DNA from: Ostrea edulis
Taxonomy: Eukaryota
Assembly (NCBI RefSeq): GCF_947568905.1
Contig: NC_079167.1
Coordinates: forward strand, 61,690,001 to 61,754,000
Direction: 5' to 3'
DNA: 64,000 bases
The notes under the pieces are model-generated. The model saw nothing but the letters and a program-made list of their open reading frames with translations, searched no databases and was not told the origin of the DNA. The first letter of the stretch is position 1, and the number at the start of each line of letters is the position of its first letter. Positions 9,164-46,991 of this stretch are shown piece after piece. Both the position numbers and the translations under genes were made by a program.

Positions 9164-11047
9164 ATGAAGGTTCCTGTAATTGGAATTGATCTTGGAACGA
9201 CTTATTCGTGCGTGGGTGTTTTCCAGCATGGGAAAGTGGAAATAATCGCCAACGACCAAGGTAATAGGACAACGCCGAGTTATGTTGCCTTTACAGAAGC
9301 CGAGCGCATCATCGGAGATGCTGCAAAAAACCAGGTAGCAATGAATCCGAAAAATACTATTTTTGATGCCAAAAGACTTATCGGAAGAAAATTTGAAGAG
9401 CCGTCTGTCCAAAGTGACATGAAACATTGGCCATTCAAAGTTACTAACAAGCAGGGAAAGCCAATGATACAAGTTGAATACAAGAATGAAATAAAGTCCT
9501 TTAGTCCTGAGGAAATTAGTTCGATGGTACTGACCAAAATGCGCGAGACTGCGGAAGCGTTTCTAGGAGAGAAAGTAACTAAGGCTGTCATCACAGTTCC
9601 GGCGTACTTTAACGATTCACAGCGCCAGGCAACAAAAGATGCGGGTATCATCGCAGGATTAGAGGTATTACGAATGGTAAACGAACCTACGGCTGCAGCC
9701 CTTGCGTACGGTCTTGACAAGAATTTATCGGGCGAAAAGAATGTTCTAATTTACGATCTAGGCGGGGGCACGTTCGATGTATCGATTCTTAACATCGACG
9801 AAGGTTCAGTCTTTGAAGTGCAGTCGACAGCGGGTGACACCCATCTTGGAGGAGAAGATTTTGACAACAGAATGGTTGATCACTTTGTAAAAGAATTCAA
9901 GAGGAAATATCAAAGGGAAATAACTTCAAACAAACGAGCCCTTAGAAGACTAAGAACTGCGTGTGAAAGAGCCAAGAGGACATTGTCCAGCAGCACAGAG
10001 GCTAGTATAGAAATAGATTCCCTTTGCGACGGGGTTGACTTCTATACAAAAATAACCCGCGCCAGATTCGAGGAACTGTGTTCTGACTTGTTCAAAAGTA
10101 CAATGGAGCCTGTCGAAAGAGCAATAAAGGATGCCAAATTAGACAAGTCTAAAATCCACGACATCGTTCTGGTTGGCGGATCAACACGAATACCAAAGAT
10201 ACAAAAACTGCTTTCTGATTTCATGGGAGGAAAAGACTTAAACCGCTCTATTAATCCAGATGAGGCTGTAGCCTACGGCGCTGCTGTTCAGGCTGCCATT
10301 TTGTCGGGTGATTCCAGTGATGTTATCAAAGATTTGCTTTTGATTGACGTTGCGCCTTTATCCCTTGGAATTGAGACGGCGGGTGGTGTTATGACAAATC
10401 TTATTGATAGAAACAGCCGAATTCCGTGTAAAATTGGCAAAACTTTCACGACATACTCTGATAATCAACCAGGCGTCCATATTCAAGTTTTTGAAGGAGA
10501 ACGCGCCATGACAAAGGACAACCATAAACTCGGAAACTTCGATCTTACGGGTATTCCTCCTGCGCCTAGAGGTGTTCCACAAATCGATGTTGAATTTGAT
10601 TTAGACGCCAACTGCATTTTGAATGTTTCTGCAGTAGACAAGAGTACGGGTAAGTCTAATAAGGTGACCATTACCAACGACAAAGGTCGGCTTAGCAAGG
10701 CTGAAATTGATAGAATGGTTTCGGACGCAGAAAAATACCAGGAGGCGGACGAAAAACAGAAGCAACGCGTACAATCTAAGAACCAGTTAGAAAACTACGT
10801 TTACGGCATCCGCAATGCAGTGGATGAGGAAAGGGGAAAACTCCAGCCCTCAGAGAAGACAGAGGCACTAAATGCCTGCGAGGAAGCCTTGAAATGGTTA
10901 GATCTTAACGCCGATGCTGAAACGTCTGAATTTGAAGGTAAATTGAAGATGGTCCAGGAGACCTGTAGTCCAATTATGACAAAGCTTCACAGCGAACAAA
11001 AAGAAAGTAGTACAGCAGGTGGACCAAAGGTGGAAGAAGTGGATTAA
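9164..11047 (+). CDS. hsp70: Intronless cytosolic heat shock protein 70 (inducible Hsp68/Hsp70-B2 type), 627 aa
   Basis: [22 protein letters not shown] and [15 protein letters not shown] signatures; RARFEEL; C-terminal GPKVEEVD; no GGMP repeats; single uninterrupted ORF. Confidence 0.98.
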
Positions 11048-11297: not shown

Positions 11298-11548
11298 CTG
11301 TCATTGGATTAATGCTGTCTGACGTGTTTCATACCAATTTTTAGGCCGTTCTTTACACACTAATTTTGACTGCTGATTATTCCGTTTAATTGATCGAGAT
11401 GTAGGGCTCACGGCAGGTGTGACCGGTCGACAGGGGATACTTACTCCTCCTAGGAACCAGATCCCACCTCTGGTGTGTCCAGGGATCCGCGTTTGCCCAA
11501 CTCCCAATTTCGTATTCCTTGTAAGAGTTTTGAGATTGATCACTGTTC
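11298..11548 (+). mobile_element. Penelope-like element 3' end fragment
   Basis: Matches the reverse complement of the 13122 copy (GCTGTCTGACGTGTTTCATACC...GGGCTCACGG...GAGATTGATCACTGTTC). Confidence 0.8.
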
Positions 11549-13121
11549 ATGTATGCGATACAATATGTTGTAAAATACGAGTACGATTTATAACGTAATT
11601 TGAAACGAGACAAAAATGATATTCCCGAGATATAGAATAGAATTTAAGAACTGTGCATAAAACGTTAAATGTAGTACAGTGTAAGGAATGCACGCTTTTC
11701 ACTGGATTCGGTAGTGTCTGTAAGATCTAGCCGGTTCCCCGCTATCAGTTATTAACGTCTTCGCTAGCCAAGTATCCAATTTGATTGGCTTGTTTTTTGG
11801 GAGATGAGAGAAAATGAATTGGAAACTTTGCTAGCGGAAGATAATTATGTGTTGCAATTCTCTCACAAGAGTTAGAAATGTGAATAGTAAATACACGTGT
11901 TCAAAACCGAAGTTGTAGCTTGAAAACTGTGAAAGCAAGTGTTAATAGTCCAGACACCGCACGTACTAAAAATAACAACTAAGTTTGACAACTAGGCATT
12001 TGTGGTATTAAAAAAAAGTTACAAAAAATCTTATTTCTGATAACTTACACAAATTGACTATATATAATGATATATCAAAGGTAACAAAAACTCTAACTTG
12101 CAACAACCCCCCCCCCCCTTTCCCTGCATACTGGTAGTATATCATTTTTGCTTGAAAACTGTTAAGGGTACATGGAGTGTCAAATGAGTATAAAAACATT
12201 TGAAGAAATCATCAATTCAATTATTGTGCGCAATAATTGAATCAATGCGCGCATCAATTCAACCCATTAGAGCAATAATTTAGTTGATGCGAGCAATAAT
12301 TATTCATTCGATGATATACGCACATTAATTAAATTGATGCGCGCATGAAATCAATTATTGCTCTCGTCAATTCAAATGATACGCGCATCAATATGGTGGA
12401 AATATTAACTAGTGAATTTTGAGCTCGGTATAAATGATTTGATGATCTCTTGATCATCAAATTGAGTTAGACATGGAAGTGTAGAAAGAAACTAAAACGA
12501 AATATAGACCACTCTGTAAATTATGATTCGATTATTGTACTTTAGGAAGACTCTTGGGCTATATGTTTGTTAAACTGGTTATAGATTATGATTTATAAAC
12601 TAATGTTGGGTGCAGTTTCTGAAGTCTGTTTTATGTATGTTGTTTGAAATGTACATAATTTTTGTTTTTATATTTTAATACGCGTTCGGCTTAATTTTCA
12701 GTCGTTTCCGCAAGACAAACCGGGTCAAAAGGTCATGTGATAAAAGTGAACAGGTCCGTTTCCCGGATGCCCGACACAAACGCGCCAAAAGATGCAAAAA
12801 TGCAAAATACATTGTATATATTCATATGATTTCATCGTATCCGGTATCATCAGCCGAAATGACGTACACTATTGTACAACATTACAACTGAATTAGTCAA
12901 ATGTTATCAGTTCTCCCTAAATCATACGCCTGAAAATATTTGCATCTCAGAGAAAATAGTGAAAAAAATATTCATAGAATAGATATACTGTGTAGTGAAG
13001 ACGATGGGAACTACTTGTAAATAGCGAAGAATGGAGACAACAGAAAAAGTTTATTCTTTGGAATGGTCACGTGACTGTCACATGAATTACCGATGGTCAA
13101 GTCAAAGTTGTTTGTAAAAAG

Positions 13122-14335
13122 AAAGGTGAAGATAACGAACATTGATCAATCTCATAAATCCCATAAGCAATACACACACAAAAAAATACTTGGGCAAACA
13201 CGGACCCCTAGGTGCCTAGGAGGAGTAAGCATCCCCTGTCGACAGGTCACGCCCGCCGTGAGCCCTATATCTTGATCAGGTAAACGGAGCTATCCGTAGT
13301 CAAAATCAGTGTGCCATGAACGGTCTAACAATCGGTATGAAACACGTCAGACAGCATTTGACCCAATGATAGATTGTATTGGCAAACTAGATCGTTATAA
13401 CGACCATAGAATTTGCGAAATGCTGACTTTAAATTAGACTGTTGAAACGCCTGTACCATCAACTTGCTTGTCAGTAGCTTACCTCGATTTAAAAACTGAC
13501 AATACGCAGAACAAGCTCTTGCGTATCGAATCAGCTGAGAGATATAAATTCCATATGCAGGGAATATTGTTGTATAAATATGGGAAGTTGACAATGGAGA
13601 AGCTGAAATTATCCCGTTTGTCATAAAGTTGAATTGTTAGTTTGCCGTTAATATCTACTTTCAATAAGATATCTAAGTATGAAGCAAAAGTGGACGACTC
13701 TGTGGTGTATTTTATTTCGAGCTTGCAGGGATATATCGAATCGACATATGAATGAAAGTTATTATTGTTAATAGATAAAACGTCGTCGATGTATTTAAAT
13801 GCCTTTCTTTTTTCTTCTTTTGATGTTTTCTGCCACACTCAACAATTTGTCAGTTATATGGTGGCGCCCAGTTTTTTTTTTTAGTGGAAGAGAGAACCCA
13901 GATACAATGTACCTGGGAAGAGACCGCCGACCTTCCGAAAGTAAACTGGGAAACTTTCTCACTTACCGGCGCGAGCGGGATTCGAACCCGCGCCGTCAGA
14001 GGTGAGAGGCCGTGTGATATTGAGCTCAACACTCTAACCACTCGGCCACGGAGGCCCATATTTAAATGTCGAATTGAAGGCCACACTTAGCAAGATATTT
14101 TTCTTTCTCACGTAGAAGTTTGTGAATAAATTCTGCTTCATATGAATATAAAAACAGGTAAGCTAACAAAGGAGCACAATTTGTTTCCATGGGATTTCTG
14201 ACAGACTGTTGGAAGACTTGATCACCAAAGACCATGAAGATATTGTCAATGAGGAACGAACTCTAGCATATTATTTTATTTCAACTTCAGAATACTTGTG
14301 CGTGGAGTCAGAGTGGTGTTTAACAAAGTAATATA
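13122..14335 (-). mobile_element. 5'-truncated Penelope-like retroelement (probably Naiad clade), RT core and thumb plus 3' UTR, interrupted by a SINE
   Basis: Degenerate RT: IDNIF.VFGDQVFQQSV..PM.TNCAPLL..LFLYSYEAEF (about 14100-14250), then KYIDDVLSINN...YLDI...LYDKRDNF...YISQLIRYARACS...FRKFYGRY...DVFHTDC*. No endonuclease follows the RT. Confidence 0.8.
13802..14058 (-). mobile_element. Full-length tRNA-derived SINE inserted in the Penelope-like RT
   Basis: Head GGGCCTCCGTGGCCGAGTGGTTAGAG...GGTTCGAATCCC, A-rich tail, 10-bp TSD TATTTAAATG (13792-13801 and 14059-14068). Confidence 0.85.
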
Positions 14336-15125: not shown

Positions 15126-18100
15126 ATGGAGAAGATAGAATGTAGGATGTTTCGAAGTGACACTGCCTACCTTTTGTATCTTCAACAAAAGACGAAAGCA
15201 GAACGTAAAGACGGTAGGGCAATGAACACTCGTTTCTTTGAATGCTTGCTAATATCTGACAGAATCGTACGACTGTGTGCATATGAATAATCTTTTCATG
15301 TCTTTAGCATTGCCATGTATAGTGTATCGCTTAAAACTTTCAGCTGTAGCTTGACAGATTTTAAAGCGTTATGTACATCAATAAAAATATATTTCTATAC
15401 TTGAAAAAAAACCCATATCATTAAATAATGCGTAAAACATTCTATCTGACAGAATCTAGCATTATTCTAATCCATTGCTTTTAGGGCTCGATCTTAATTA
15501 AGTCTCGCAGATTTTTTTTCCCTTCTTATTCAAGAACTCGAAAAAAACACATCGAAGGAGAAAAAGGCTGTGGTTTATAAGGACGAGTGCCGTCGACATG
15601 GGGTTTCTTGCCTCTCTAGGTTTATCCGCCAGATCGAATTTTCCAACATTGATATGTCTAATGCACGCCTTAACAGTTTGGAGGTTCTGACCATCTTCAA
15701 CACGATAAAGGTATCGAAAACTAGCAATAAATACAAGTGACCACAGTGATTATACCGAGCATATACATGGGTATGTGTGGATCCAGAAATTTTCTTAAGA
15801 AGTGGGTTCCACCCCATGTTTTTGTAGGGACCCAGTCAAAACTAAGGAACAGCATTTATATTTTACCACTGGAAGTGCATAAAATAGACAAATATGTTCA
15901 TTTTTACGAATCTCATGGGATCCTGGGTTCGGATCCTCATTCCACCAACTATAGGCGCTCCTAACAGCCTTAAGATATTTTTGAATTTAAAAAGAAAATG
16001 GGGAAAATTTGTACTGTAATGAAAATTGCACGGTACGATAATGAAAATCTCCAAACATTTTTGTTGATAGAAGGCGGTGATCATTCAGAAAATTTATATA
16101 CATGTAATAATCTCCATGTACCAATGACGTAAAATTAAGACGATATATCGGTAATATTCTACAGAATGAAAATATAAAACCGCTATTTATTTGCTAGACT
16201 GATCACACATTACGGGAACTCAACCTCTCTGGAACTAACATGGATTGTCCCTCATACAAATATCTTTCCAATTTTCTGAGAAAAAATCATACTCTGTCAA
16301 ACCTGGTAAGTCTTTTCAAATTGCGAATATTTTCACTCTTCAATTTGTTTATTTAGGGTAAGATCTATGAACATTCTATTAAACATTATTTTAAAGGTAA
16401 AGAATTCAAAAAGTGACAATTAGTATATTACAGATAGTACAAAAATGTGCCATACATGGAGAGACCTTAAAGGCAATTGTTGCCAGCCTAATGACGTCAC
16501 ACATTACATTTCTGGATTTAGGAAGTAAGTGATTTGTATTGAAATCTTCTAAAACTTTGTTGATGAAGTAGTGCATGTATTTCGTAACCTATACGAATAT
16601 ATGCATGTGTATATTTCACTCTACGAGTGTAAAATAATGAATTGTATCAATAAATCACTGATAATATAAAATATTTGAGCACATGTTATGTATTTCCCAG
16701 ACAATGGCATACAAGACAACGACAGCGAAATATTGGCGGAAATACTGGTAAGCTTTGCAAGTTTTAAAATTCTAAACTAGTGTTGGAGAATTGTCATTGA
16801 AGTGAGAAAAGTGCGTAGAAGAGAAACAAAATCAAAGTTTGATAATACTAGGGAATCTCCAGAAGTGATTCTCTGTTTGATATGATCTTTAACACTAATT
16901 GATATAAAAGGTTAACGGCTTTAAAAGACAGTGGTTTTTTTTTTGTTCATTCAAGACCATGAAAACACTGAAAGAACTTTATTTAAGTCACAACAGATTG
17001 GAAACAAGAAATACAAAATCAATTGGGACTTCACTGGGTGAGTGAGATGGCTTCGTTAAACTTTATATGTTGAAATTGAGAGAATTTGCTTACTCTGACA
17101 ATCATTGATTTAAATTGCAAATGAAAAAGTACATAGTTTGATCCCAATCGCCAACTTTCTGCATGAAATTATAATTGATGTGCAAATGAATGACTTCGCA
17201 TGAAATTGTATCGCATATCACGGAATGATTTTCTCTTCCTATTCAAACTGCCTCAGCCTACAGCGCCTTGGAAACTTTAGACCTTTCTTGGAATCACATT
17301 CGTTTCATTGGAGCCATAGAAATTGCAAAAGGAATCAAAGTACGTACATCTATATAATAAGCAAAGACTCAATATTTGAAATTTCTTACTGAAAAATGCA
17401 TTTACAATGTCTATGCATCGCTGTTTTTGTCGTGGTAATGCTTTACTGAAATGAACTCAATTTAAATGTCTAACAGAAAAACCGGAAGTTACGACGACTA
17501 AATTTGTCATGGAATGGTTTCGGATTCGAGGGATGTGTTTCTCTTGCGGAAATGCTGGAAACTAACGATGTTCTCACAGATCTCGATCTCACAAACAACA
17601 GAATTCATCCACCAGCGTTGATAGCACTTATTCGAGGAGTAACACAAAATAGTTCCCTGAAAGTATTGAACGTATGCATACTTTATATACATTGTTCTTA
17701 AAGCAAGTCTATAATAGTAGAAGTATATATGGATAGTATTCAAAAATTGACATTTTGTTTTGTTATAGCTGAGTATGAATCCAATTCCCGCCTCGTACAC
17801 TTGCACGCTGCTTGGCACTATTCTGAAGAACACGTCCATTTATAAGTTGATATTAAAGGTATGGATTGTTTTCATCAATTCGAGTTATATTGACAAAATG
17901 TGTGGATATCATTGTTTCTGAAACGTTCAGATTGAAATAAAGAGCTATTGCGACTTTGTTATGGATGAACAAGTGAAGATAACGTTCAGTGATCAATTAA
18001 AAAGTGAACTTTATGTACGACGACTTTTTATAGCGAATTTATTCACTAGGTACAATAAAAAAAAAAGTACACTATTTGATGTTAGAAAGATTTGATTTTA

Positions 18101-19709
18101 TATCTATATTTTTAAAACATTTGTCAAGGACAAGGGGTTCTTTGCTGACGTTTAGTCTATTGTCCGTCTATTATACAATTATTTCCTTAACATCCACAAT
18201 TAATTTACGTATATCTTTAAATTAGCAGAATTTTGAACCTGTTGTAATTTTTAAAAAATCATTTCAACCAGTTTTTAGATATTTTTTATTTTACTGTTTG
18301 ATGGAAATGTGTTATTTTCTGATGTTGACATATACTTCTGTTTATGTATGTCTGACATCTTTAAAAAGTGACAACAAACACATTTTCTTTGATTATTGAT
18401 TTTTAAAATAAACCACATGTATAAAAAAGTGAAGATAACGAACATTGATTAATTTCATAAATCCTGTAAAGAATACAAAATTAAGAAAAGGGCAAACACG
18501 GACCTCAGGGCATACCAGAGGTGGAATCAGGAGCCTAGGAGTAAGCATCCCCTGGTCAGACCCACCATGAGCCCTATATCTTGATCAGGTAAACGGAGTA
18601 ATCCGTAGTCAAAATCATTACGTAAAAAACGGCCTAACATGCACGTCAGACAGCATTGGACCCAGTGATAGCATTGACAAATTAGATCATTATAACGACC
18701 ATAGAATTTTTGAAAAATTTGTTTAGACTAGAAAAACTACTGGATAGATACATGGATGTGTATTTTAGATATATCGTGAACTCTTTTGCAACTCTCAAAC
18801 TTTGAAAAATATACTTGTGTAAGGTGAGAGCTATATCATGAACTACAAATTGTACTACTAGATTGCGTACTAGTATTCAAAGAATTCCTGAAAGCCTTGA
18901 ACCAAATATTGCAATATTGGGTGTAAATGGATACTAGTACATTTACAGAAAAAAAAATCCTACTGCAAGTTTAACATGCTCTTCCCCTGCATTATCATAA
19001 TTTAATATACGATGGGCTTGAAATTTCAATAAATATCAAAATTTCAGAAAATAGTTGTAAATGAGGAGTTCGTGGACATTCTAAGAACTGTCAAACAGAC
19101 GAGACGGATTCACGTGGAGTACGAAATATGCCTTCCTGTTTCATCGGTAGACAGCCAGACGATGTCTAAACAGGTCAGGCCACCTAGGCTCTTCAACCTT
19201 GACCCACTTAATCTTCTTTTCATGCTGAAGGAGAAGAACAGAGCGCAGGACTTCTTTAACAAGATAAACAGAAACGGGGACGATGTGTTGTCTTATGAGG
19301 AATTCAGGGAGCTTTTCAAGGCAAGTTAGATATAAATCATGAATAGAATTAAAATAAACTTGAAAATGAAAATTATATGATAAAATGAATAAGGACAATA
19401 TTTCACGAATGCCCCACGGAAAGGTCTTGTCACAAGGGCTACTCATGTGAAATATCAAAGCTCTATCACTTACTGTTCAAAAGGTATTAGCAAGGTTAAA
19501 CTTTTGAAAAAGTAGGTCAAATTCCAAGGTCAAGGGTAAAAAATGTTGGTACCCACGGAAAGGTCTTGTCACAAGGAATTCTCATGTGAAATATCAAAAG
19601 CTCTATCACTTACTGTTCAAAAAGTATTTGCAAGGTTAAAGTTTTCAAAAAGTAGGTCAAACGTCAAGGTCACGGGGTCAAAAATGTTGGTACCCACGGA
19701 AAGGTCTTG

Positions 19710-19745
<36 letters not shown>

Positions 19746-19838
19746 TCACTAACTGTTCAAAAGTTATTAAGCAAGGTTAAAATTTCAAAAAGTAGGTCAG
19801 ACTCCAAGGTCAAGGTCACGGGGTCAAAAATGTATATA

Positions 19839-19893
<55 letters not shown>

Positions 19894-21934
19894 CTCACGG
19901 TGGGTGTGACCGGTCGACAGGTGATGCTTACTCCTCCTAGGAACCTGATCCCACCCCTGGTGAGTCCAGGGGTCCGTGTTTGCTCGGCTGTCTGTCTGTT
20001 TTGTATTGCTTATAGGAGTTATGGGATTGATCACTGTTCGTTATCTTCGCCTTTCATACTAGTAATAGTTACCTCCCAAAAACCAGGTCAACATTTACAA
20101 GTGCGAAAAATGTTCAGAGAATTATTAAGACTTGGAAAGTATAAAGGCGGATAAATATGATGAAAGTAGCTTAACTGGAACGATGGAAACTTGAGGAGGA
20201 ATGCTACAACAAAGAAACTTGATATGGATGAAAAGTGGAGGATATGTACAACAATATTTTGAAATTGAAACTTTCAAATTTACTTAATTTAGACAAAAAT
20301 ATAGTTGTAGCAGAAAGTAATCTGGATTGTTTTTTAACAACTCCTGTTGGGCTCGAAACCGCAATCGACAGATCTGCAGTAAGCACGACGGGGCTACTCT
20401 GCAATTAAAGGCAAATATTGTTGATATTTATATTTCAATTCTTGTTTTAAAAGGAGGTCAGCCATTATTACGTTTTACGAGGGCTGTTCGATATGTTATG
20501 TATCGATATCTCAAAAGCATTCGACTCAAACAGTGAAATGAACATTACATCCCTTCAAAGTATTCTCCGCGGTCTAAAATACATAATTTCAATCTCTGAA
20601 TCCATTTCTGAAATGCGTCACGGTACGCTGATTTAGGTAGACCTCTGAGGCACTGGCTGATGGCTGAGCCAAGGGCTTGTCGGAACTTGTAACGATGACC
20701 AGATAAAAACTTTTAAAGTTTTGGAAAAAGGAAAAAGTCGCATGAGCAAGATCTGGAGAGTATGATGGTTGTGGCAAAACGGTAACATTCTCCCGCTTCA
20801 AAAAGTCCTTCACAAGCTCAGATGTATGTGATGGAGCATTATCATGAAGTAGACGAACATGCCTAAATCCTGACACAGGGCGTCGTTTATGATAATATTT
20901 CTTTAACTGGGGCAAGAGGAGTTTCTTGAGTTCGCGATCGTATGGGCAAATATGAGGAAAGCTTGCATGGGTTTACCAGTGACATCCTCCATCAGTCAGT
21001 GCCTCAGAGGTCTACCTAAATCAGCGTACCGTGACGCATTTCAGAAATGGATTCAGAGATTGAAATTATGTATTTCAAACCGCGGAGAATACTTTGAAGG
21101 GATGTAATATTCACTATTTGAATCGAATGCGTTTGAGATATCATACCATACACATTACGTATCGAACATCCCTCGTACAAAGTTTCAATGCACATCCTCA
21201 TTATGCAAGGTGAAGATAACGAACAGTGATCAATCTCATAACTCCCACAAGCAATATAAAATAGAAGAAGTTCCAGTGAAAAGCTTTCATAGGAATTCGA
21301 TACTCTTCGCTCATTATTCTGACCCCCTGGACCTAAATCGAAAATGCTAAACCGTATTGCACATTTATGCCCAATCATATGTAAAAGGAACTTTGTTACC
21401 CCTTAAAATGACAGAGGGACAACAACAATAACAACGTTCTATATGATTTTAGAAACTTTTAAGGTTTTGTTAATACTGTTTGTGTGAAAAGTAATGATTA
21501 CTAAAACTAAAGGTAGTGCAAGACTTCAAATTGTATGTAATGTCTTGTTCAGAAAGCTGGTATTCCTGTGTCCCAATTAGTTCTGGATAAAATAATAGAA
21601 TTCATGGACCAAAACAAAGATGGAAACATTGATTTAAGGTAAGGATATCAACAATGTTTGTTTCCAAAACCTTGTTTATACGTACGTTTAATAACTAATT
21701 AAAGAAATGTAATACTGTATTAACAGTATTAAAAGAAATGTACAGATATGTAAATATAGATTCCAATTATTTTACAGCGAGTTTTTGGATGGCGATAAGA
21801 GAATTAAGAAAATTTCACGAGGGCAGGCAAAGGAAAACATGAGAAGAGAAAGTTACACAAAGTATTCACGCTCTTTCAGAAAAGCCAAGATTGATTCACA
21901 AACATTTCGTCTCAACATTGAAACCGACCAATAA
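15126..21934 (+). CDS. LRRC74A: LRRC74A-like leucine-rich repeat protein with C-terminal EF-hand pair, about 491 aa; exons 15126-15213, 15535-15710, 16198-16305, 16434-16524, 16701-16747, 16956-17037, 17257-17339, 17477-17671, 17769-17858, 19048-19320, 21553-21638, 21778-21934
   Basis: All exon phases join into one open frame. RI-type LRRs (LRELNLSGTN, ITFLDLGNNGI, LKELYLSHNRL, LETLDLSWNHI, LRRLNLSWNGF, LTDLDLTNNRI); EF-hand-like loops NRNGDDVLSYEEF and DQNKDGNIDLSEF. The start codon and the exact ortholog are less certain. Confidence 0.75.
18429..18715 (-). mobile_element. Penelope-like element 3' end fragment
   Basis: GTGAAGATAACGAAC...CACGTCAGACAGCA...TATAACGACCATAGAATTT, the same family as 13122. 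Confidence 0.75.
19412..19830. repeat. About 140-bp tandem satellite-like repeat x3 (Helentron-associated type)
   Basis: Units begin CCCACGGAAAGGTCTTGTCACAAGG at about 19412, 19552 and 19693. Confidence 0.8.
19890..20055 (+). mobile_element. Penelope-like 3' end abutting a (TA)n microsatellite (19842-19889)
   Basis: GGGCTCACGGTGGGTGTGACCGGTCGACAGG...GATCACTGTTCGTTATCTTCGCCTTT directly after the TA run. Confidence 0.8.
20478..21175. mobile_element. Fold-back mariner (D34D) derivative made of two inverted 3' ends with a captured HSPA12 exon fragment
   Basis: TA|CGAGGG...CCCTCG|TA. Arm 20478-20663 is the reverse complement of arm 20989-21175. Minus-strand transposase remnant KKYYHKRRP..VRLLHDNAP...YSPDLA(P)CDF gives D34D spacing once a 1-nt frameshift is repaired. 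Confidence 0.9.
20899..20991 (-). pseudogene. Captured fragment of HSPA12 exon 2
   Basis: Aligns to 24849-24942 with 5 substitutions and a 1-nt deletion (88 of 94 positions). Confidence 0.9.
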
Positions 21935-22571: not shown

Positions 22572-25500
22572 TCAGTATCTTGTGGTTAGTTCTTTGGAAA
22601 CTGTGTATTCCACCCCCGTCTTACTGTCTACCGCTGTTATTCTTAATTCTGTCTCTCCAAATACTAGTGTTTCTTCTATTTCCACGATTTCTCTGTTTCT
22701 GAAATTTTCTAAAGGAATGTTCAGTGTGATGAGAGGAGTGCAGTCATCGACAAATTTCGGATCGTCTTCTTCAGAAATATATACAACGCATTCCAAAAAG
22801 GATTGCTTTGTATCCAAAACCTGAAAAGCCTGAGATTTTGAACAGCCTGGTTCTATCGGATCCCCTATCGTGACAAATTTATGGAAGACATCTTTGCAAC
22901 GTACTTTACCGTTGATAATTACTCTCTTGTTGCTAGGATGAAGACGGGGGTCGAACGGAGGCCAAGATTGCATACCGAATGTATATGGAGCACAACGAAT
23001 TGAAATAGCTTCCGGTAGGTACCCAAAGTAGACCGCGCCTTTTAGGACGATGAGTCCCGAGTCGTGTGGTGCAATTACAGTTTTTGATTCAAAATGTTCT
23101 TTTATTCTTTGGCGAACAATTTCACATTCAGAAAACCCTCCAACCAATAGGATGTACGGAATTTCAGATGACACATGTTCAAAAACGTCATCCATTTTCT
23201 TCATAATTTCTCTCACGATAGGTTCAAAGAGTTTCATCGTCAAGTTCTCATTTAACGTCAATTTGTTTCTTCGAAATACCAGATCGGAGGAATACTTCGA
23301 AGATTTGATGGCTGTTTCGAAGTCTTTGTCTGCTGAATGTTCTTTCATAACTTCGTTTATTGATACAGGAATATTTATTGTGATAGAGGGTTTGTTTATC
23401 TTGACCTGTCGCTTTTTTACTTCAAAGTCTCTAAGAAGTTCCAAGTAATCTTCCATTTCCTCATCAATAAATGATTTCATGACTTTCCCACCAACAATCT
23501 CTTCCACGAATCGTTGGAATTTATCCGTCACTGCTTTTCCACCCCATGGGCCACCAGATGCTCTCCAAAGTTCTTGCAACTTATTATTCTGGGTTCTTCT
23601 ATGGACGGTCAAATCTGCAGTACCCCCTGTAATTAATTTGTATTAATATGTAATTGTAGTGGTACACAAGAACTGAATATACGTTGACAACGTCTATTTT
23701 ATATTCATTAGAGATATCAAGAATGCCACCAAATAATTTTACTCAAATTCATTTGTTGACAGTGTATCAAATACCTCCCAAGTCTGCAACCATGTATTGA
23801 ACTCCTGGTTTTGCAAGCTGAGACTGTCCAATATCTTCCACATTGAATGGCAGGGTTTGACAAAACACAGAGGCTGCTTCAGGCTCCAACGCCACAACTA
23901 ACAAATTTGGGTGTATACCAGCCTGGAAAAGGAAGACATGTTGAAGTCAAAACTAACAAATCTGAGTGTATACTTGTAATGAATCCGGAATTTATAACGT
24001 TGTATGTGATTGGTTTTGAATATATAGAGGTAGCACGGAATAAAATGGCGGAACCCATGAATGCGTGTTTTGATTGATTAGCGAGTATACAGCTAATAAT
24101 CTACAAAGACAGTACAATACTAGCCTGGAAAAGGACGATATGCTGAAGTTAAAACTAACAAATCTGGGTGCATGTCAGCTTGGAAAAGGACAACAAGCTG
24201 AAGTCAAAACTAACATTTCCAGCCTGGAAAAGGACGATATGTTGAAGTTAAAACCAAATATTTTGATTGTATACCCGCCTGGAAAAGGGAGAAATATGAT
24301 GAACTCCTTTGAAGTCCAGTTTGTTTGATTTTTTAAAAATATTATTATTCCCTATGTGGAACTAAAGAAATTTTTCACAAAGGTAGCGCTAGCCTAGTGG
24401 TTTGGGCACACACCACACACTTTGTAACTGTGAGGTCTCGGATTCAATTCTAAATCCTGTCTGCGTTAAAAGGCAACGATTTTTATTCGCCAATCGCCCG
24501 GTATTAGAAGAGAACGACAAAGGGGTCTTTCGGGTGTGACAAGACCGAGTGTGCCACGCACAGGTCAAAATCTGTTGCCCTTCCATAAGGGTGAAAAACG
24601 GAAAACAATATATAACACACAAAACAATCTCTTGCAACGATAAAAAGATACTACATGTTTTATAAACTTATAATAGAGAAATCTAAACGATAGCATAAAT
24701 ACATTCATGTATTCATGTTGGAGCTTCGTTGAAGACTGGTCTTACCTTAATAGCAGCTTTTCGCATAAAAAGTTTGGCTCTTTCATCCCAAATAGCAGGA
24801 ACAGTGAGTACAAACAAAACATCTTCATCCTTTGCCCCTGTTATTGCATTCTTTAACTGGGCCAAGAGGAGTTTCTTGAGTTCGCGAATCGCATGGGCAA
24901 ATACGAGGAAAGCCTGCATGGGTTTACCAATGACATCCTCCACAACCGAGCCATCGGTAACATTCTAACAAAAACACAAAATCCCATTGCTTTTACTGTA
25001 ATTATTTCAAATACAATATAAATGCTGTATAATATCTTTCTAATAAAACTATTCCAATAGAACATGGGACCATAGTAGTGTGGTTGAGGACCATATCGAA
25101 AGTGGAAATATTGTGACAGCATCTTTCCGTGGGATTTAACAATACTGATTTGAAAATTTGATAGTTTATTTTTATAGTTACTTGAATAATGGCAGTTCAT
25201 TGCATCGTGTTCGTGAAAGGCGAAAATAACGAACAGTGATCTATCTTGATTTCGTGGACAAGTCAACTCCACAAATAAATTTTTTAAAAAATACCACGAT
25301 AAATAGACCATGTTTAAGTTAAATTTCAAGTGCATAAAATAATCTTACCTTGGAGATATGGAGTTTCATTTTGAAATTGTTGAAATAATAGTAGTCTCGG
25401 TACTTTTTTCCTGGAAGTTTTGCTAGTTCACTGTATTCATTCTCTGCCGTATAACCAAAGGAATTAAACGATTGGTCTGGGTTCAAAAGAACTACCGTAG

Positions 25501-25675
25501 GCGCTTTCTCAGACATCAGGTTACCGCCGGTCCATTTATTAGTACGTACAATTTCCCACGAGTCTTTAGAGGAAAATGCATAGCCTGAATATGTCGTTCC
25601 AAAATCGATTGCAGCAACAAACAAAAATGGTGGTCTGGGGGGTTTCTTTGGAATTCTTGACGAAAGCATGCTCAT
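22572..25675 (-). CDS. HSPA12: HSPA12-like atypical HSP70 (gene 1), 582 aa; exons 25675-25349, 24964-24746, 23922-23775, 23626-22572
   Basis: VAAIDFGTTYSGYAFS, LTVPAIWDE, ALEPEAAS, ADLGGGTADLTVH, ASGGPWGG and LLVGGFSEC motifs; GT-AG introns in phases 0,0,1; no EEVD. Confidence 0.92.
23900..24290 (-). repeat. Tandem duplications (about 45-55 bp) of the HSPA12 exon-3 acceptor and exon start
   Basis: GCCTGGAAAAGG (minus CCTTTTCCAG|GC) at 23921 (true site), 24123, 24222 and 24277, with a degenerate copy at 24178. Confidence 0.85.
24385..24620 (+). mobile_element. Degenerate tRNA-derived SINE-like repeat
   Basis: GCTAGCCTAGTGGTTTGGG...GGATTCAATTC A/B-box-like head followed by a non-coding body. 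Confidence 0.4.
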
Positions 25676-25963
25676 AAAACGTGTTCAATGCTACAAAACA
25701 AATAAATAAATGGACTAACGCAGAACGCTTCTCCATAAACTACAAGGTATTTTTTATGAAGTAGTCAAGAACATTTATCTATATCCATCATTAACCATCC
25801 TTCTATGCACTTTCTTTTGAAATGCAGTTTTGGTATCTATTACCATTGGTATCACCGATCCAAGTAAAAAGTAGTCACCTATTTGAATGGGTTAATATCA
25901 CCAACTCATATTGAGATTATATTATTCACCTGTATCCCGTTTGTACTTTGGTTGCGTCAAATG

Positions 25964-26330
25964 AAAGGTGAAGATAACGAACAGTGATCAATCTCATAAC
26001 TCCTGTAAGCAATACAAAATAGAGAGTTAGGCAAACACGGACCACTGGACACACCAGAGGTGGGATCAGGTGTCTGGGAGGAGTAGGCATCCCCTGTCGA
26101 CCGGTTACACCCGCCGAGAGCCCTATATCCTGATCAGGTAAACGGAGTTACCTGTAGTCAAAATCAGTGTGCCAAGAACGACCTAACAATCGGTATGAAA
26201 CACGTCAGACAGCATTTGACCCAATGATAGGTTGTATTGACGAACTAGATTGTTATAACGAACATAGAATTTGCGAAATGCTGACTTCAATCGAGACTGT
26301 AGAAACCCCTGTACCATCAACTTGTTTGTA
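25964..26330 (-). mobile_element. Penelope-like element 3' fragment
   Basis: AAAGGTGAAGATAACGAACAGTGATC...; encodes KLMVQGFLQSRLKSAFRKFY...DVFHTDC*. Confidence 0.85.
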
Positions 26331-28559: not shown

Positions 28560-30564
28560 CATTGAAATGGTCTGTCACCGAATAATTTCGAGATTACTTG
28601 TTAGGATCCAAAGTCGTGTTTGCGGATAATAATCCACTAAGCTACTTGCAGACGGCTAAACTTGGTACAACAGAGATGAGATGATATAATCATCTAGGAC
28701 AGTTCTATTTTTCTATGAAATACAGATCAGGAAAAGTAAAACTGATGCTCTAAGTAGGAGACCCAATTCAATTGAAGATCCTGAGACCGTTATTCAGTCT
28801 GTGACAAAGAGCACATTGATATGTGATCTTATTGGTGAAAATGTACTTTGTTTAAACACTTGTTTAGTGAATATTGCATCAGTCGAAACAGCTGCTATGG
28901 TACCATGATTTCTCCCTGCAGATTTGATGCCTTTAAAAAACCCACATGCTCCCCTGTTTTAAGTTGTGTGATATATTCGATAAAAAGACCAGAGCAGTTG
29001 ACCAAAAGTGTGATTCGTAAGGAGAATATCGAAGAAAGATGTGTGAAAACTGTTAAATCAGAAGAGCAAACTATTCATGGAAAATTCAGTGCTATTCAAA
29101 AATGTGCAAGGATGAAACTGGAAAAATCAGACAACTCGTTTTACCAGAATCTCTGAAAGAGAAAGTGTTGGACATGCAGCATGCATGATCATGCTGGACA
29201 TCAAGGTGTGGAACGAACACTGGCATTACTACAGAAAAGATGTTTTTGGATACGAATGGCTTAGGATATGCAAAAGTGGTGTAAAAACTGCTTGCATCAA
29301 GCCACCAATGGGTAATATTATTGACAGACATGTTCTCAGGCAGTACCAACAAGAGATCAGAGAACTGTAACAGTGACTAAAACGCTTAAGGACTGGTTCG
29401 TGAAGTATGGTATACCTCATAGAATACACAGTGACCAGGGACGTAATTTTGAGAGTCGCGTTGTGCAAGAACTGTGCAAATTGTATGGCATAGAAAAATC
29501 GAGAACCACACCGTATCATGCTGAAGGAAACGGCCTGTGTGAACCTTTTAACCGAACAATGCATGATCGACTAAGAACTCTACTTCTGATCAAAAGAAGA
29601 GATGGGCTGCATTTCTTCCAGAGCTTATATATGTTTATAACTCTACTGTTCATTCGTCAACAGGATATTCTCCTTATTGTCTGTTTTGGACGGGAGCCTA
29701 CTTTGCCATCGATTTCATTCTAGAAACGCATGCTAATGCAGAGTTTAACGTTCCCACCATAGATGACTGGATTGACAAACACAAGAAAAGACTTGGTGAA
29801 GCTTTGCGTTCGGCAGCTATCAACACTGAAAAAATGCACTGTGTAGGAAATATTTCCAGAACAGGAATACCAAGGAAGCATAAATCAAAATTGGCACGGG
29901 AGTGTTATTGCGAAATCGTGTGATATGGAGAAACAAAATTCAGGATACTTGGTCGTCCATACCATATAAGGCGGTTGCAAGACCTGGAGAAAATGTATAT
30001 ATAATATTTAGCTTGCTGACGCGACTGGACCAACTCGGAGTGTTACACGTTCCGAACTTTTGGACACCGGCAATAAAGTCTAAGATGAAGTGGATAGTGA
30101 CATTAGCGATGCCAGTGATGTGATTGTTGGCCAGCTTGTAGACATCACACCACAAGAAGCGCATCCAATAGATGTGAATCACGCTGATGCAACTGGTGGA
30201 CAGAGTTGAGGAAGACTTGTGTGGCGACGTGCACCAAGACGCTCAGAACGTTCGACCAGAGGGGAACATTCAAATCCATTTCATTTACCAAAAGGTGCTG
30301 TTGTGAGAAATATTCTCCATTGAAAACAAAGGACTTTGCTACTTTGGGTGCGTCGTTGAGAGCTTCTTTAAGTGCAACACAACATTTAGCCAGTCATGGG
30401 CAAATGCACATACATGTATACCAAAGCAGTAGTTTTTAAAAAAAAAGTGTATACATGTATATGTGATACACAAAGACTATATAGATATTTTAGAATAGGT
30501 TATTAATGTTTCCAAAATTGTGTTTTCACATTGATAGGGACAGCAATATCAAAGGGGGGAGATA
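28560..30564 (+). mobile_element. Degenerate Gypsy/Ty3 pol remnant (RNase H C-terminus, integrase, tail) with PPT
   Basis: FRDYLLGSK..ADNNPLSYLQTAKLG (28585-28680); [17 protein letters not shown]...[12 protein letters not shown] (29373-29723); many stops and frameshifts; PPT AAAGGGGGGAGA at 30551-30562. Confidence 0.85.
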
Positions 30565-31050: not shown

Positions 31051-31170
31051 TAACATATATCTTTAAATTTTCAACTGTTTTCGCCTACATAATACTATTA
31101 CCAGCAATGCGTATTTATCACTGTATAAATACTTATCATGTCGAGGCTAAAAGACAACAAAACGATATTA

Positions 31171-31460
31171 ACGAAAAGACAACAAAACGATATTTAGCGA
31201 CCCGACATAACGAAAAGACAACAAAACGATATTTAGCGACCCGACATAACGAAAAGACAACAAAACGATATTTAGCGACCCGACATAACGAAAAGACAAC
31301 AAAATGATATTTAGCGACCCGACATAACGAAAAGACAACAAAACGATATTTAGCGACCCGACATAACGAAAAGACAAAAAAATGATATTTAGCGACCTGA
31401 CATAACGAAAAGACAACAAAACGATATTTAGCGACCCGACATAACGAAAAGACGACAAAA
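31171..31460. repeat. 39-bp minisatellite x7
   Basis: Unit ACGAAAAGACAACAAAACGATATTTAGCGACCCGACATA. Confidence 0.95.
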
Positions 31461-31742
31461 TGTTAATATATAACGTATTTCACACCTTGAGTCAGCCGTA
31501 ATGACAACACAGTTCAACAGACAACGACATTTATTCAACAACACCCATAGAAGAAAAATAAGTAAAAGGTTCAATAATATTACAAAAATGGTCAGGAAAA
31601 ATCCTGTCTCTGACTATAAAGTTTATAATGGTAATAATGATATTAATAATAAATCACTCCCAACCCAGGGTAGGGACAAGTTATCCTACCTAACTTAGAC
31701 GGGGGAAGGTCTAAGAAAAAGAAAACCCCTATTTGAATTATG

Positions 31743-32222
31743 AAAGGCGAAGATGACGAACATTTATCAATCTCATAACTCCTATAAGCAATACAAAATA
31801 GATAGTCGAGCAAACACGGACCCCTGGACACACCAGAGGTGGGATCAGATGCCTAGGGGGAGTAAACATCCCCTGTCGACCGGTCACACCCGCCGCGAGC
31901 CCTATATCCTGATCAGGTAAATCAGACAGCATTTGACCCAATGACATGTTGTATTGACGAACTAGATCGTTATAACGACCATAGAATTTGCGAAATGCTG
32001 ACTTCAATCGAGACCCTTGAAACCCCTGTACCATAAACTTGTTTGTCAGTAGCTTGCTTCGATTTAAAAACTGACTATGCGCAGAACAAGCTCTTGCGTA
32101 TCGAATCAGTTGAGAGATATAAACACGATAAGCAGGTGATAATGGAATATTGCTACATAAATATGAGAAGTTGACGATGGAGAAGCTGAAATCATCCCGT
32201 TTGTCATACAGTCGAGTTGTCA
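31743..32222 (-). mobile_element. Penelope-like element 3' fragment with internal deletion
   Basis: Same terminus; encodes QLIRYARACSA...VQGFQGSRLKSAFRKFYGRYNDLV. Confidence 0.85.
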
Positions 32223-44123: not shown

Positions 44124-46954
44124 GTTCTGTGAGATCGAAATGCAGAAAGCTCTTCGTTGCAGCCATTGATTTTGGAACTACTTACTCTGGTTATGCATTT
44201 TCCGCCACATCCGATTGGTCCAAAGTTTTGACCAGTAACTGGACTGGAGGGAAGGTCGTCACTTTGAAGACACCGACAGCTCTACTGCTGAATTCAGACA
44301 AGGAATTCCAGGCGTTTGGATATGAGGCAGAGGACCAGTATTTAGACTTGGCTCGAGATGAAGAACACGAGGATTATTATTTCTTTCATCGATTTAAAAT
44401 GATACTTCATTCCGAAAAAGCAAGTTCCAAAATACTTATTTGTATGGTTATATTAACACTGCTATGAATTATAGATGTACTCACGACTGATATGCAAATA
44501 ACAGGTGTATTTGTAATTTTGTTCATTTTTCTAACATATCCTGACTTGAAATATACAATAACGGAAACTGAAATGGACTAAAATGAAATTAGTCTTATAT
44601 TTACATTTTTACTTTTATTTCTGTCAGAATTCCCAGCAGTTACAATAGACATTCTGTATTATCAAAATCGATACGGGCATTGTTTATTAATGCAGCACGT
44701 TCATGAGGAAATGGCTATCTTTACAATTTGTAGTTTTAGATATTAAAGCCAGGACATTGGAAATGTAAATATTGAGATATGAACTATGATGCTAGTTAGT
44801 AGTTAAGTGTAATTTTTTGTTTTCCCCATTGGAAAAATGGTGGATACTTAATCTAGCAAGAATTATTTAGATAACTACTGCAAATCAAGACCAATGCATG
44901 TACATGTAACACAAGTTAAGTGAAATAATCATCTGTGGTTGTCTGTATAATCTTATAATAATTATGACGATAATTAATGCTCATGCTTTAATTTTTCATT
45001 CTACTAGGCAATCAGTCGAAAAACAAAACTGAAAGATGCCACAGGTAAAGAAATTGAAGCTATAAAAGTTTTTGAACTCTCAATAAAATATCTTGTGGGG
45101 GACTTGATGAAAACTTTGAAAAACAGCTACCCGGATTTAAAGGAATCGGATGTGGAGTATGTTATCACTGTTCCAGCTATTTGGGATGATCGATCGAAGC
45201 AATTCATGAGGGAAGCTGCGCGAGAGGTAGGAAGCATGGACTGAAACAATTTGACACAGGGTTATCTGCACTTTAATCATTTACAGACGGTACTCCAATT
45301 TGTTGGCAGAACAAATGTTTAACACAAATATTCCTTGGGAGGAATCTCTATTGTACATATTTGATTTACGTGGATTAAATATTTGTTCAGTGTAATCATG
45401 GTTAGTCACTGTAAGAACTGGAGGGGAAATTTTTTAAAACTTAATTTATTTGTTTGCAGATAAAATGTCAATCTTTTTATTTTTAAACACTTCTTTTATT
45501 CCATGAAACCCACTTCGGATTGATCACATTCCTATTTATACTTCTCGCTGTTGCAGGCTGGTATTGAGAAATCTTCCTTGACCATTGCCTTAGAACCGGA
45601 GGCTGCATCCATTCATTGCCAGTATTTACCAGCAAAAAACCTCAACCTGTCCACTTCCAAGTATCTTGGGGAGCTTGCTGTTGGGACCAAGTATTTAGTT
45701 GCTGATTTAGGAGGTTTGTATATCTGAGATTCATGTGCCCAGTCTGTTCTGGATTTTATATTACATGCTCACAGGGTTGTCGGTAGCTGCAGTAATGTAG
45801 CCCTCTCCGATTTTTTAAAATTTGTTTTTTTGGGGGGGGAGGGGGAATGGGCTCCTATCCTGAAAACGTAAGAATAAAAGAAAATCAGAAAGGGTTACAT
45901 TATTGCATCTAGGTTGTTGGCTGAAAACCGCAGTCCATTGAAATGGCATAAATTTTCAAATTAATAGAAAAGTACATGTATGTATTAATCATTAGCACAC
46001 TGCAAAAGACAAAATATACTGGGAAATTGTATGTTACAAAATTGTCAAGATCTAATTTGTGATGTATTTGTGACTTTTTTTAACTGGGGTATGTGCAGTC
46101 ATCAATTATACATCACTAGTAGCCTTATCAACTGATGATTAAAAGTCTATCATCAGATTATTAATAAAAAACAAAATCTACAGCAAAGAGTCATATCACC
46201 CAGTAACATTTCTAAATAACAGTAAACCGGGTTTAGTACTTTACTGGTATCTGAGTTATTATATTGCCTTCAAAATTTACTTTATTAAGAATTCAACAAA
46301 ATGTCACACAGATGTCTGTGATTGAAAAAACAACACCATGGTCCCAGTCTTAGCCAAGTCCGACATAGTGGCAAATTTGACCTTGACAGTAAACCCAATA
46401 TTTAACAAGTTTTTGTCCTGATCTTTCCATTTTATAAATACACCTCTGTCTTTACAGTGTTGCTAAAAGAGATGTCATTATGTCTCCCCTCTTCCAGGGG
46501 GAGTCATTGTTTTGGTACTTTCTGTCCATTCGTCTGTCTGTCACAAAATCTTGTTAATACCTTTCCTTCCATAATATATAGCTTATGAGATAGACTTGAA
46601 ACTTTGTACAATGCTTCATTACTATTTGTAGATGTGCATATTGTTGGGACAAGGGGATTGAATTATTTTCCTAAAAGTTATGGTGGATCTAAGAGGGGTG
46701 GAGGATGTATTAATAACTTGTGAACACCTCTCCTCTTATATGGCTTATCTGTTAGATTTGAAACTTTGTACAATGCTTCATTGCCATATGTAGATGTGCA
46801 TATTGTTGAGACAGTAGGATCCAATTATTTCCCTAAAAGTGATAGTGGATCTAACAGAGGTGGAGGATGTTTAATAGCTCATGAACACTTTTTCTCTTAT
46901 ATGGTTTATCCAATAGACTTGATTGATTGATTGATTGAATCTTGCTTAACATTT

Positions 46955-46991
<37 letters not shown>

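What the first reader, a model, noticed from the sequence alone, without database searches (positions are those of the whole stretch)
20478..21175. Fold-back 'Pack-mariner' that captured an exon piece of the neighbouring HSPA12 gene
Seen: a TA-flanked 698-bp element built from two inverted copies of a mariner 3' end (about 185-bp arms). Between them lie a transposase remnant and 93 bp that match HSPA12 gene-1 exon 2, 4 kb away, at 88 of 94 positions. Both junctions show microhomology: CCA on the right, and TTCTTTAACT on the left, where the HSPA12 codons Q-L-K run in frame into transposase L-K-K-Y-Y. Known: gene-fragment capture is well described for Pack-MULEs, Helitrons and CACTA elements, much less so for mariner. 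Inference: template switching during gap repair after excision copied a nearby gene. The copy has Thr (TGK) where gene 1 has Ile, matching gene 2, so the donor could be an ancestral allele or a paralog.
Basis: partly seen in the sequence, partly recalled or inferred. Interest (0 to 1): 0.8.

Follow-up and report, generated by a model that had tools for sequence, protein, structure and literature searches.

The report
Fold-back mariner relic with HSPA12 filler
A dead 698-base jumping-gene remnant in the flat oyster genome was patched together during DNA repair from two mirrored copies of its own tail plus 93 bases copied from a heat-shock gene 4 kb away; it is a clean example of a known repair accident, with no sign that it does anything.

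Summary
The window is Ostrea edulis chromosome OX387707.1 (GCA_947568905.1). A TA-flanked 698-bp element (20478-21175) carries a genuine mariner 3' part of 431 bp on the minus strand. It also carries an inverted copy of the last 187 bp, and between them 93 bp that match exon 2 of the neighbouring HSPA12-like gene at 88 of 94 positions.

- **The parent lacks the insert.** A 92%-identical mariner copy from another data set (L001) has ordinary transposase sequence where the insert sits.
- **TIRs are naturally short.** A more distant copy (L002) has only about 22 nt of terminal inverted repeat, so the 187-bp arms are a rearrangement.
- **Both junctions show microhomology.** One is AGTTAAAGAA, 10 bp (9 of 10 in L001). 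The other is CCA.
- **The donor is the gene-1 lineage.** Using a related oyster's copy as outgroup, Thr is the ancestral state. Four substitutions and a 1-bp deletion arose in the copy and one substitution arose in gene 1. Gene 2 is only 46% identical and is irrelevant.

Best reading: interrupted gap repair with serial template switching, as proposed for the Aedes MITE Goblin, with filler DNA as in Ds and P derivatives. Copy number and mobility after capture could not be tested, so the 'Pack-mariner' label stays open. This is a new member of a known kind, of modest interest. The scan has no record of it on other DNA.

The parts
20476..20477 (.). TA target-site duplication, left
   Evidence: Read directly. 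It is paired with TA at 21176-21177.
20478..20663 (-). Left arm: the genuine 3' end of the mariner (TIR, 3' UTR and the last ~40 codons of the transposase), contiguous with the remnant to its right
   Evidence: A single collinear match of window 20908-20491 to L001:631-1050 at 92%.
20664..20898 (-). Transposase remnant (from about K-K-Y-Y-H-K-R-R-P through HDNAPSH and SPDLA), with a 1-bp frameshift and a stop
   Evidence: Translations. Mos1 transposase residues 230-290, E 4e-9. Sub-threshold Pfam DDE_3 hit, E 2e-5, 24.8 bits against a cut-off of 28.6.
20899..20908 (-). Junction microhomology AGTTAAAGAA, shared by HSPA12 exon 2 and the mariner
   Evidence: Three-way and four-way alignments. L001 has AGTTCAAGAA.
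20899..20991 (-). 93-bp filler copied from exon 2 of HSPA12-like gene 1, in sense orientation relative to the transposase remnant and in the same genomic orientation as the donor
   Evidence: 88 of 94 identity to 24849-24942. Differences polarised with L005.
20989..20991 (.). Junction microhomology CCA (TGG on the minus strand), shared by the exon and the mariner 3' part
20989..21175 (+). Right arm: inverted copy of the mariner 3' end, replacing the 5' TIR, 5' UTR and about 225 codons
   Evidence: Matches L001:879-1052 at 93.7% in inverted orientation. It matches the 3', not the 5', subterminal sequence of L002.
21176..21177 (.). TA target-site duplication, right
   Evidence: Read directly.
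24849..24942 (-). Donor segment inside exon 2 (24746-24964) of HSPA12-like gene 1. The gene has four exons at about 25349-25624, 24746-24964, 23773-23925 and 22578-23633.
   Evidence: tblastn of Saccostrea echinata HSPA12A-like P0012 maps four collinear exons at 63-76% aa. Exon 2 is identical in two independent O. edulis read sets, L006 and L007.

Best explanation
A full-length DD34D mariner once sat at this TA in minus orientation. It lay inside the range of an LRR/EF-hand gene and 4 kb from HSPA12-like gene 1. A double-strand break at the element, most likely its own excision, was repaired by synthesis copied from the sister copy, and the growing strand changed template three times. First, after copying the short 5' TIR it re-annealed to the near-identical 3' TIR and copied 187 bp of the 3' end inward, which made the inverted arm. 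Second, it jumped through a CCA match into exon 2 of gene 1 and copied 93 bp. Third, it returned through the 10-bp match AGTTAAAGAA to the transposase region, where repair was completed. The product is a 698-bp non-autonomous fold-back mariner with two 3'-type ends and an exon-derived filler. It has since decayed neutrally and has no evident function. Shown: the anatomy, the absence of the insert and of long TIRs in relatives, the microhomologies, and the donor lineage. Inferred: the trigger (excision), the order of the switches, and that the event happened in place.
For: Anatomy. L001, a 92%-identical mariner copy, is collinear with window 20908-20491. Just upstream of the microhomology it carries ordinary transposase sequence instead of the 93 bp. 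L002, a 75% relative, has 5' and 3' ends that share only about 22 nt. The right arm matches the 3' subterminal region, so the 187-bp arms are derived. Microhomology is 10 bp at one junction and 3 bp at the other, and the 10-mer occurs only 3 times in 64 kb. On the donor, the insert shares 8 states with gene 1 against the related-species copy L005. Four substitutions and a 1-bp deletion are insert-derived, and one (Thr to Ile) is gene-1-derived. Gene 2 is 46% identical. No other paralog above 47% aa apart from the 84% related-species copy was found, and the exon-2 search gave only self plus that relative. Timing is coherent: the arms differ by 12 substitutions in 181 nt, about 3.3% per lineage, against 4 of 93 (4.3%) on the insert lineage. 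Three of the four substitutions on the insert lineage change the amino acid, and a 1-bp deletion shifts its frame, so the copy is unconstrained. Precedent: the same TIR-to-TIR switch model was proposed for the Aedes MITE Goblin (PMC3814204).
Against: The parental copy at this site no longer exists, and no full consensus of the family from this genome was available. L001 has C where the element has A inside the 10-mer, so the true overlap may be 4+5 rather than 10. Copy number in the rest of the genome is unknown, so formation elsewhere followed by transposition here is not excluded. The arms diverge unevenly, 3 of 120 inner against 9 of 61 outer (p = 0.003), which a single clean duplication does not predict. 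No independent read set could be brought to span the junctions.
Confidence: 0.72

Rival explanations
1. The same product arose by replication-based template switching (FoSTeS/MMBIR-type fork stalling at the transposon) and not by repair of an excision gap.
For: Microhomologies of 3 and 10 bp, an inverted duplication and a nearby template are also the signature of replication-based switching. PMC3814204 lists both classes as compatible with such junctions.
Against: The rearrangement is confined exactly to the inside of a TA-flanked transposon with both outer ends intact. An excision gap predicts this, whereas a random fork collapse does not. The TIR-to-TIR switch needs synthesis starting from the flank.
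Confidence: 0.13
2. It is one copy of an amplified, mobilised Pack-mariner family, meaning the chimera transposed after capture and this copy is not the birthplace.
For: Both ends are complete 3'-type TIRs with a TA duplication. Pseudo-Mos1 constructs with two 3' ITRs transpose efficiently (PMC2642840). Pack-Mariner elements exist in rice (PMC8903248).
Against: There is no second copy in the 64-kb window. There is no homologous ORF at 90% identity or more in the protein collection, and the junction pattern is absent from JGI metagenome contigs, though both are weak negatives. The element sits 4 kb from its donor in the same orientation, which is expected for the birthplace and unlikely for a random re-insertion.
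Confidence: 0.1
3. Two mariners inserted independently, tail-outward, into a local HSPA12 pseudo-exon. Two later deletions then removed their 5' parts.
For: Each arm has its own substitutions and indels.
Against: Both mariner/HSPA12 junctions lie inside the transposase coding sequence and not at TIR+TA ends. No other HSPA12-like sequence flanks the element. The model needs four events plus a pseudo-exon for which there is no trace.
Confidence: 0.03
4. It is an assembly chimera that joins mariner and HSPA12 reads.
For: None directly. The junctions could not be confirmed in independent contigs.
Against: A chimera would carry the exon sequence unchanged. Here the insert differs from gene 1 by 5 substitutions and a 1-bp deletion, while two independent read sets give exon 2 identical to the window. 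The arms also differ from each other and from all other copies. The flank up to 21236 is confirmed at 99.9% by a Logan contig.
Confidence: 0.02

Closest known systems
Goblin, a Stowaway-like MITE derived from the Tc1/mariner element Ozma in Aedes aegypti (Yang et al. 2013, PMC3814204)
   Same: A non-autonomous Tc1/mariner derivative whose long TIRs are an inverted duplicate of the 3' subterminal region. It has microhomology at the breakpoints. The proposed origin is gap repair with a switch from the left TIR to the right TIR.
   Different: Goblin's extended TIR is 54 bp and the element carries no host gene sequence. It is an amplified family. Here the arms are 187 bp, a 93-bp exon piece is included, and only one copy is known.
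Filler-DNA deletion derivatives made by abortive gap repair (maize Ac to Ds, Rubin and Levy 1997 as cited in PMC3814204; P-element and Mutator internal deletions; from my own knowledge for the latter two)
   Same: An internal deletion of an autonomous cut-and-paste element. Short direct matches lie at the junctions, and stuffer sequence is copied from nearby DNA.
   Different: They belong to other superfamilies and hosts. The combination with a fold-back of one end is not typical.
Pack-Mariner / Pack-TYPE transposons of plants (Gisby and Catoni 2022, PMC8903248)
   Same: A non-autonomous element with Tc1/mariner-type TIRs and a TA duplication that contains a fragment of a host coding exon.
   Different: Pack-TYPE elements are recognised as families that move the captured DNA around. 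Here mobility after capture is untested and the fragment lies next to its source. This is an animal, not a plant.
Turmoil-1 transduplication in C. elegans (Sela et al. 2008, PMC2572040)
   Same: An animal DNA transposon that carries fragments of host protein-coding genes.
   Different: In Turmoil-1 the fragments sit inside the ITRs of a multi-copy element and one may be exonised. Here a single short fragment sits in the loop between the arms and is decayed.

Membership tests
mariner (Tc1/mariner superfamily, DD34D) | TA target-site duplication | tested here: met
   TA at 20476-20477 and 21176-21177.
mariner (Tc1/mariner superfamily, DD34D) | Short (~28 bp) terminal inverted repeats in the family | tested here: met
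   The relative L002 has 23-nt inverted ends at 96% and no further 5'/3' homology. The element's two termini match that TIR.
mariner (Tc1/mariner superfamily, DD34D) | Transposase homologous to Mos1, with 34 residues between the second and third catalytic Asp | tested here: met
   Mos1 transposase E 2e-9 to 4e-9 over residues 230-290. In P0001 (L001) exactly 34 residues lie between the D of HDN and the D of DFF. In the element the same spacing holds once the 1-bp frameshift is allowed for.
Abortive-gap-repair derivative with filler DNA (Ds/P/Goblin type) | Internal part of the autonomous element missing, ends retained | tested here: met
   Only L001:631-1050 equivalents are present. The 5' ~630 bp or more are absent.
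Abortive-gap-repair derivative with filler DNA (Ds/P/Goblin type) | Microhomology at each novel junction | tested here: met
   10 bp (9 of 10 in L001) and 3 bp.
Abortive-gap-repair derivative with filler DNA (Ds/P/Goblin type) | Filler traceable to another genomic template and absent from the parent | tested here: met
   93 bp from gene 1 exon 2, 3.95 kb away. It is absent from L001 and L017.
Pack-TYPE (Pack-Mariner) transposon | Non-autonomous TIR element with a TSD that contains host exon sequence | tested here: met
Pack-TYPE (Pack-Mariner) transposon | The chimera has transposed: two or more copies with the same captured piece at different sites, or an insertion polymorphism | not testable with these tools
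   The rest of the O. edulis genome is not searchable here. There is one copy in 64 kb. Exact-ORF look-ups and a junction scan gave nothing.
Foldback (FB-type) elements | Long arms built of tandem subrepeats, unrelated to a transposase gene | tested here: not met
   The arms are unique mariner 3' sequence that includes coding sequence. No direct subrepeats were found in them.

The most novel reading that the evidence does not exclude
The chimera is a live vehicle and not a relic. With two 3'-type ends, the configuration that transposes efficiently for Mos1, it may have been mobilised and spread an HSPA12 exon piece through the flat oyster genome. Alternatively, because it is transcribed within the plus-strand LRR/EF-hand gene, its 187-bp perfect-stem hairpin with antisense HSPA12 in the loop may feed small-RNA pathways that touch the stress gene next door.
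Probability: 0.07. Interest if true: 0.6.

Novelty: new member of a known kind. Interest (0 to 1): 0.33.

Why it matters
The locus preserves, in one place, the donor, the product and both junctions of a three-step template-switching repair event at a mariner in a mollusc. Such events are thought to create MITEs and Pack-type elements, but they are rarely caught with the donor still next door. It gives a concrete animal example for the origin of exon-carrying Tc1/mariner derivatives. It also offers a simple population marker (filled or empty site) in Ostrea edulis. It does not change what is known about how these elements form.

Tried and rejected
- **Gene 2 as donor.** Rejected: 46% aa identity in exon 2.
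- **Natural long TIRs in the family.** Rejected using the 5' end of L002.
- **Outer part of the right arm as the original 5' end.** Rejected: its changes relative to L001's 3' end are no more numerous than the left arm's, and it matches 3' subterminal sequence.
- **Independent support for the junctions, or an empty site.** I looked up the exact ORFs 20589-20915(-), 20327-20536(+) and 20204-20404(-) in public assemblies. None is on record, probably because short-read graphs break in the arms and in the flanking repeat. The Logan contig L003 stops at 21236.
- **Junction pattern in JGI metagenome contigs.** No match.
- **HSP70 look-up with a 10-kb flank.** It returned only the window's own assembly for the long contig.
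- **The 59-nt inverted pair 20000-20058 / 21202-21260.** It is not part of the element. It belongs to a ~173-bp interspersed repeat with at least six copies in the window.
- The big representative search, structure prediction and fold search were not used, because the family scans left nothing open. The N run at 54524-54669 was left as it is.

Full report
**Where the window comes from**

The intronless HSP70 ORF at 9164-11047 was looked up by exact sequence. It returned NCBI record GCA_947568905.1:OX387707.1, a 94.4-Mb contig, positions 61689164-61711047. That locus (L008) is letter-for-letter the first 21,047 bases of the window. The annotated 'heat shock 70 kDa protein 12A-like [Ostrea edulis]' P0016 sits on a contig of the same length and matches the window's gene 2 at 100% in its last exon. 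The window is therefore European flat oyster, Ostrea edulis. Earlier notes of this scan had already called the genome an oyster.

**Check of the observation**

All the stated features are present.

- The element runs 20478-21175 and is flanked by TA on both sides.
- BLASTN of the region against the window finds the two arms, 20470-20663 and 20989-21183, inverted, at 87.5% over 200 columns. The repeat finder gives an inner 125 nt at 97%.
- The same BLASTN finds one match to the HSPA12-like gene: 20899-20991 against 24849-24942, 93.6% over 94 columns, E 4e-35 (alignment).
- On the minus strand the stretch 20589-20915 translates to a mariner transposase C-terminal part with HDNAPSH and YSPDLA.
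- It matches Mos1 transposase residues 230-290 at E 2e-9 to 4e-9. It also gives a sub-threshold hit to Pfam DDE_3 at E 2e-5, 24.8 bits against a cut-off of 28.6.
- The remnant carries a 1-bp frameshift after SPDLA and a stop after FLFPKL.

**Is the fold-back a rearrangement, and does the parent already contain the 93 bp?**

A word search with the 108-aa ORF found short ORFs of related mariners, and I fetched three of their contigs.

- **L001** (ENA metagenome contig, 1121 bp) is collinear with window 20908-20491 at 92% in a single HSP. Its positions 879-1052 match the right arm in inverted orientation at 93.7%. Just upstream of the junction motif it continues with ordinary transposase sequence, and its upstream ORF carries the HTH and Transposase_1 regions. 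None of the 93 bp is there.
- **L017** (90-92% identical) lacks the 93 bp as well.
- **L002** (about 75% identical) has both ends. They share only a 23-nt inverted repeat. Inward of that repeat the 5' end is unrelated to the 3' end, while the window's right arm follows the 3' subterminal sequence.

The 187-bp arms are therefore derived and are not a natural long TIR. The right arm replaces the 5' TIR, the 5' UTR and about 225 codons.

**The junctions**

On the minus strand the HSPA12-derived stretch ends in CCCAGTTAAAGAA. The mariner homology begins with AGTT(C/A)AAGAAATATTAT. The 10-mer AGTTAAAGAA is shared by the element and the exon. L001 has one mismatch, TTC for TTA. A more distant relative, P0003, has Leu at that codon, so a full 10-bp match in the real parent is plausible but not shown. 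The 10-mer occurs three times in the window against 0.47 expected, and two of those three are the element and the donor. At the other junction, CCA is common to the exon and to the mariner 3' part.

**The donor**

tblastn with Saccostrea echinata HSPA12A-like (P0012) maps gene 1 as four collinear, uninterrupted exons on the minus strand. The copied segment lies wholly inside exon 2, 24746-24964. I searched the exons one at a time by reference and did not join the spliced model.

Gene 2 (44150-51141, plus strand) is only 46% identical in exon 2.

The search with the last-exon ORF of gene 1 returned:
- the same ORF from an O. edulis read set at 100%;
- one JGI metagenome ORF at 84%;
- S. echinata at 63%;
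- nothing else above 47%, including the annotated O. edulis proteins.

The exon-2 ORF search returned only itself and a 93% relative from the same JGI sample. That relative (L005) serves as an outgroup.
- It has Thr where the insert has Thr and gene 1 has Ile.
- At the other five differences between insert and gene 1 (four substitutions and the 1-bp deletion) it agrees with gene 1.
- At eight further sites the insert and gene 1 agree against it.

The insert is therefore a copy of the gene-1 lineage, taken before the Thr-to-Ile change in gene 1. Two independent O. edulis read sets (L006, L007) give exon 2 identical to the window. The differences in the insert are thus real divergence, which also argues against an assembly chimera.

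**Timing**

Polarised with L001 and L002, the arms differ by 12 substitutions in 181 aligned positions. Seven are on the left arm and five on the right, and each arm also has one private deletion of 5 or 6 nt. That is about 3.3% per lineage, close to the 4 of 93 (4.3%) on the insert lineage. One event could have made both the arm and the insert.

One oddity remains. The inner 120 nt of the arms carry 3 substitutions and the outer 61 nt carry 9 (Fisher p = 0.003). I have no tested explanation for this.

**Mechanism**

The anatomy fits interrupted repair synthesis with serial template switching. Synthesis would enter from the right flank through the short 5' TIR and switch to the near-identical 3' TIR. 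It would copy 187 bp inward, switch through CCA into the exon 3.95 kb away, copy 93 bp, and return through the 10-bp match to the transposase region.

The first switch is exactly the model published for the Aedes MITE Goblin, whose extended TIRs are an inverted copy of the 3' subterminal region of its parent Ozma (PMC3814204). The same paper cites Rubin and Levy 1997 for capture of stuffer sequence during abortive gap repair.

Sequence alone cannot tell an excision gap from a stalled replication fork. The confinement of all changes to the inside of an otherwise intact TA-flanked element favours the excision gap. The closeness and shared orientation of donor and copy favour formation in place.

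**What could not be tested**

The rest of the O. edulis genome is not searchable with these tools, so copy number is unknown.
- The window holds one copy.
- Exact-ORF look-ups for three ORFs in and beside the element found nothing.
- A junction pattern was absent from JGI metagenome contigs.
- The Logan contig that covers the flank ends at 21236, inside an interspersed repeat.

These are weak negatives.

**Comparison with known kinds**

Pack-Mariner elements are described in rice (PMC8903248). Host-gene fragments in an animal DNA transposon are described for Turmoil-1 (PMC2572040). A search for this element or for mariner/HSPA12 chimeras in oysters found no report.

Elements with two 3' ITRs transpose well in the Mos1 system (PMC2642840), so the chimera could in principle be mobilised. 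There is no evidence that it was.

As RNA the element folds into a long hairpin, -364 kcal/mol, z = -30. It lies within the range of an annotated plus-strand LRR/EF-hand gene that runs from window 15126 past 21047. The HSPA12 piece sits in the loop and not in the stem, which weakens any small-RNA scenario against HSPA12.

**Verdict**

The element is a new, well-preserved member of a known kind: an abortive-repair, fold-back, filler-carrying mariner derivative. The Pack-mariner label is unproven and the interest is modest.

Noticed in passing
L017:1-974 versus L001:627: A second related mariner copy (ENA ERZ17174878) loses homology to the full-length relative within about 10 bp of the breakpoint used in the window's element, next to an A-run. 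The upstream 605 bp are unrelated AT-rich DNA. This is either a possible breakpoint hot spot or chance (about 1-2%).
   Followed up: partly
window 20478-20663 versus 20989-21175: The arms of the fold-back diverge unevenly: 3 of 120 substitutions in the inner (coding-derived) part against 9 of 61 plus two indels in the outer UTR/TIR part (p = 0.003). A natural long TIR does not explain it. Gene conversion of the inner stem or local mutability remain open.
   Followed up: partly
window 15126 to beyond 21047, + strand: An annotated gene of GCA_947568905.1 (491-aa product, LRR and EF-hand Pfam hits) spans the element. LRR and EF-hand-like ORFs lie at 17504-17701 and 19072-19329. The element would therefore be transcribed as a long hairpin (dG -364 kcal/mol) with antisense HSPA12 sequence in its loop.
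   Followed up: partly
window 9164-11047, + strand: An intronless canonical HSP70 gene (627 aa) lies 11 kb from the HSPA12-like gene. The identical protein is present in at least eight O. edulis resequencing runs.
   Followed up: partly
window 22572-25675, - strand: HSPA12-like gene 1 looks intact, with four exons at 63-76% aa to Saccostrea echinata HSPA12A-like. No annotated O. edulis protein matching it surfaced in the word search. Its nearest O. edulis relative found is gene 2 at 42%.
   Followed up: partly
window 19886-20058, 21199-21265, 25961-26128, 31739-31907, 11399-11548, 13121-13270, 18425-18579: A ~173-bp interspersed repeat family has many copies in the window. Two copies bracket the mariner relic in inverted orientation, and one abuts a (TA)n-type microsatellite at 19830-19890.
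   Followed up: partly
window 29373-29723, + strand: An ORF with a retroelement integrase-core look (HSDQG...FES...PYH..GNG motifs), probably a retrotransposon fragment.
   Followed up: no
window 31107-31458: A minisatellite-like tandem repeat gives repetitive ORFs on both strands (a unit of about 13 codons).
   Followed up: no
L004 and L005 (JGI 3300045951): A JGI metagenome sample holds host DNA of a related oyster: 84.5% nt identity in the last exon of gene 1 and 93% aa in exon 2. Collinearity with the window stops at 21539, before the element.
   Followed up: partly
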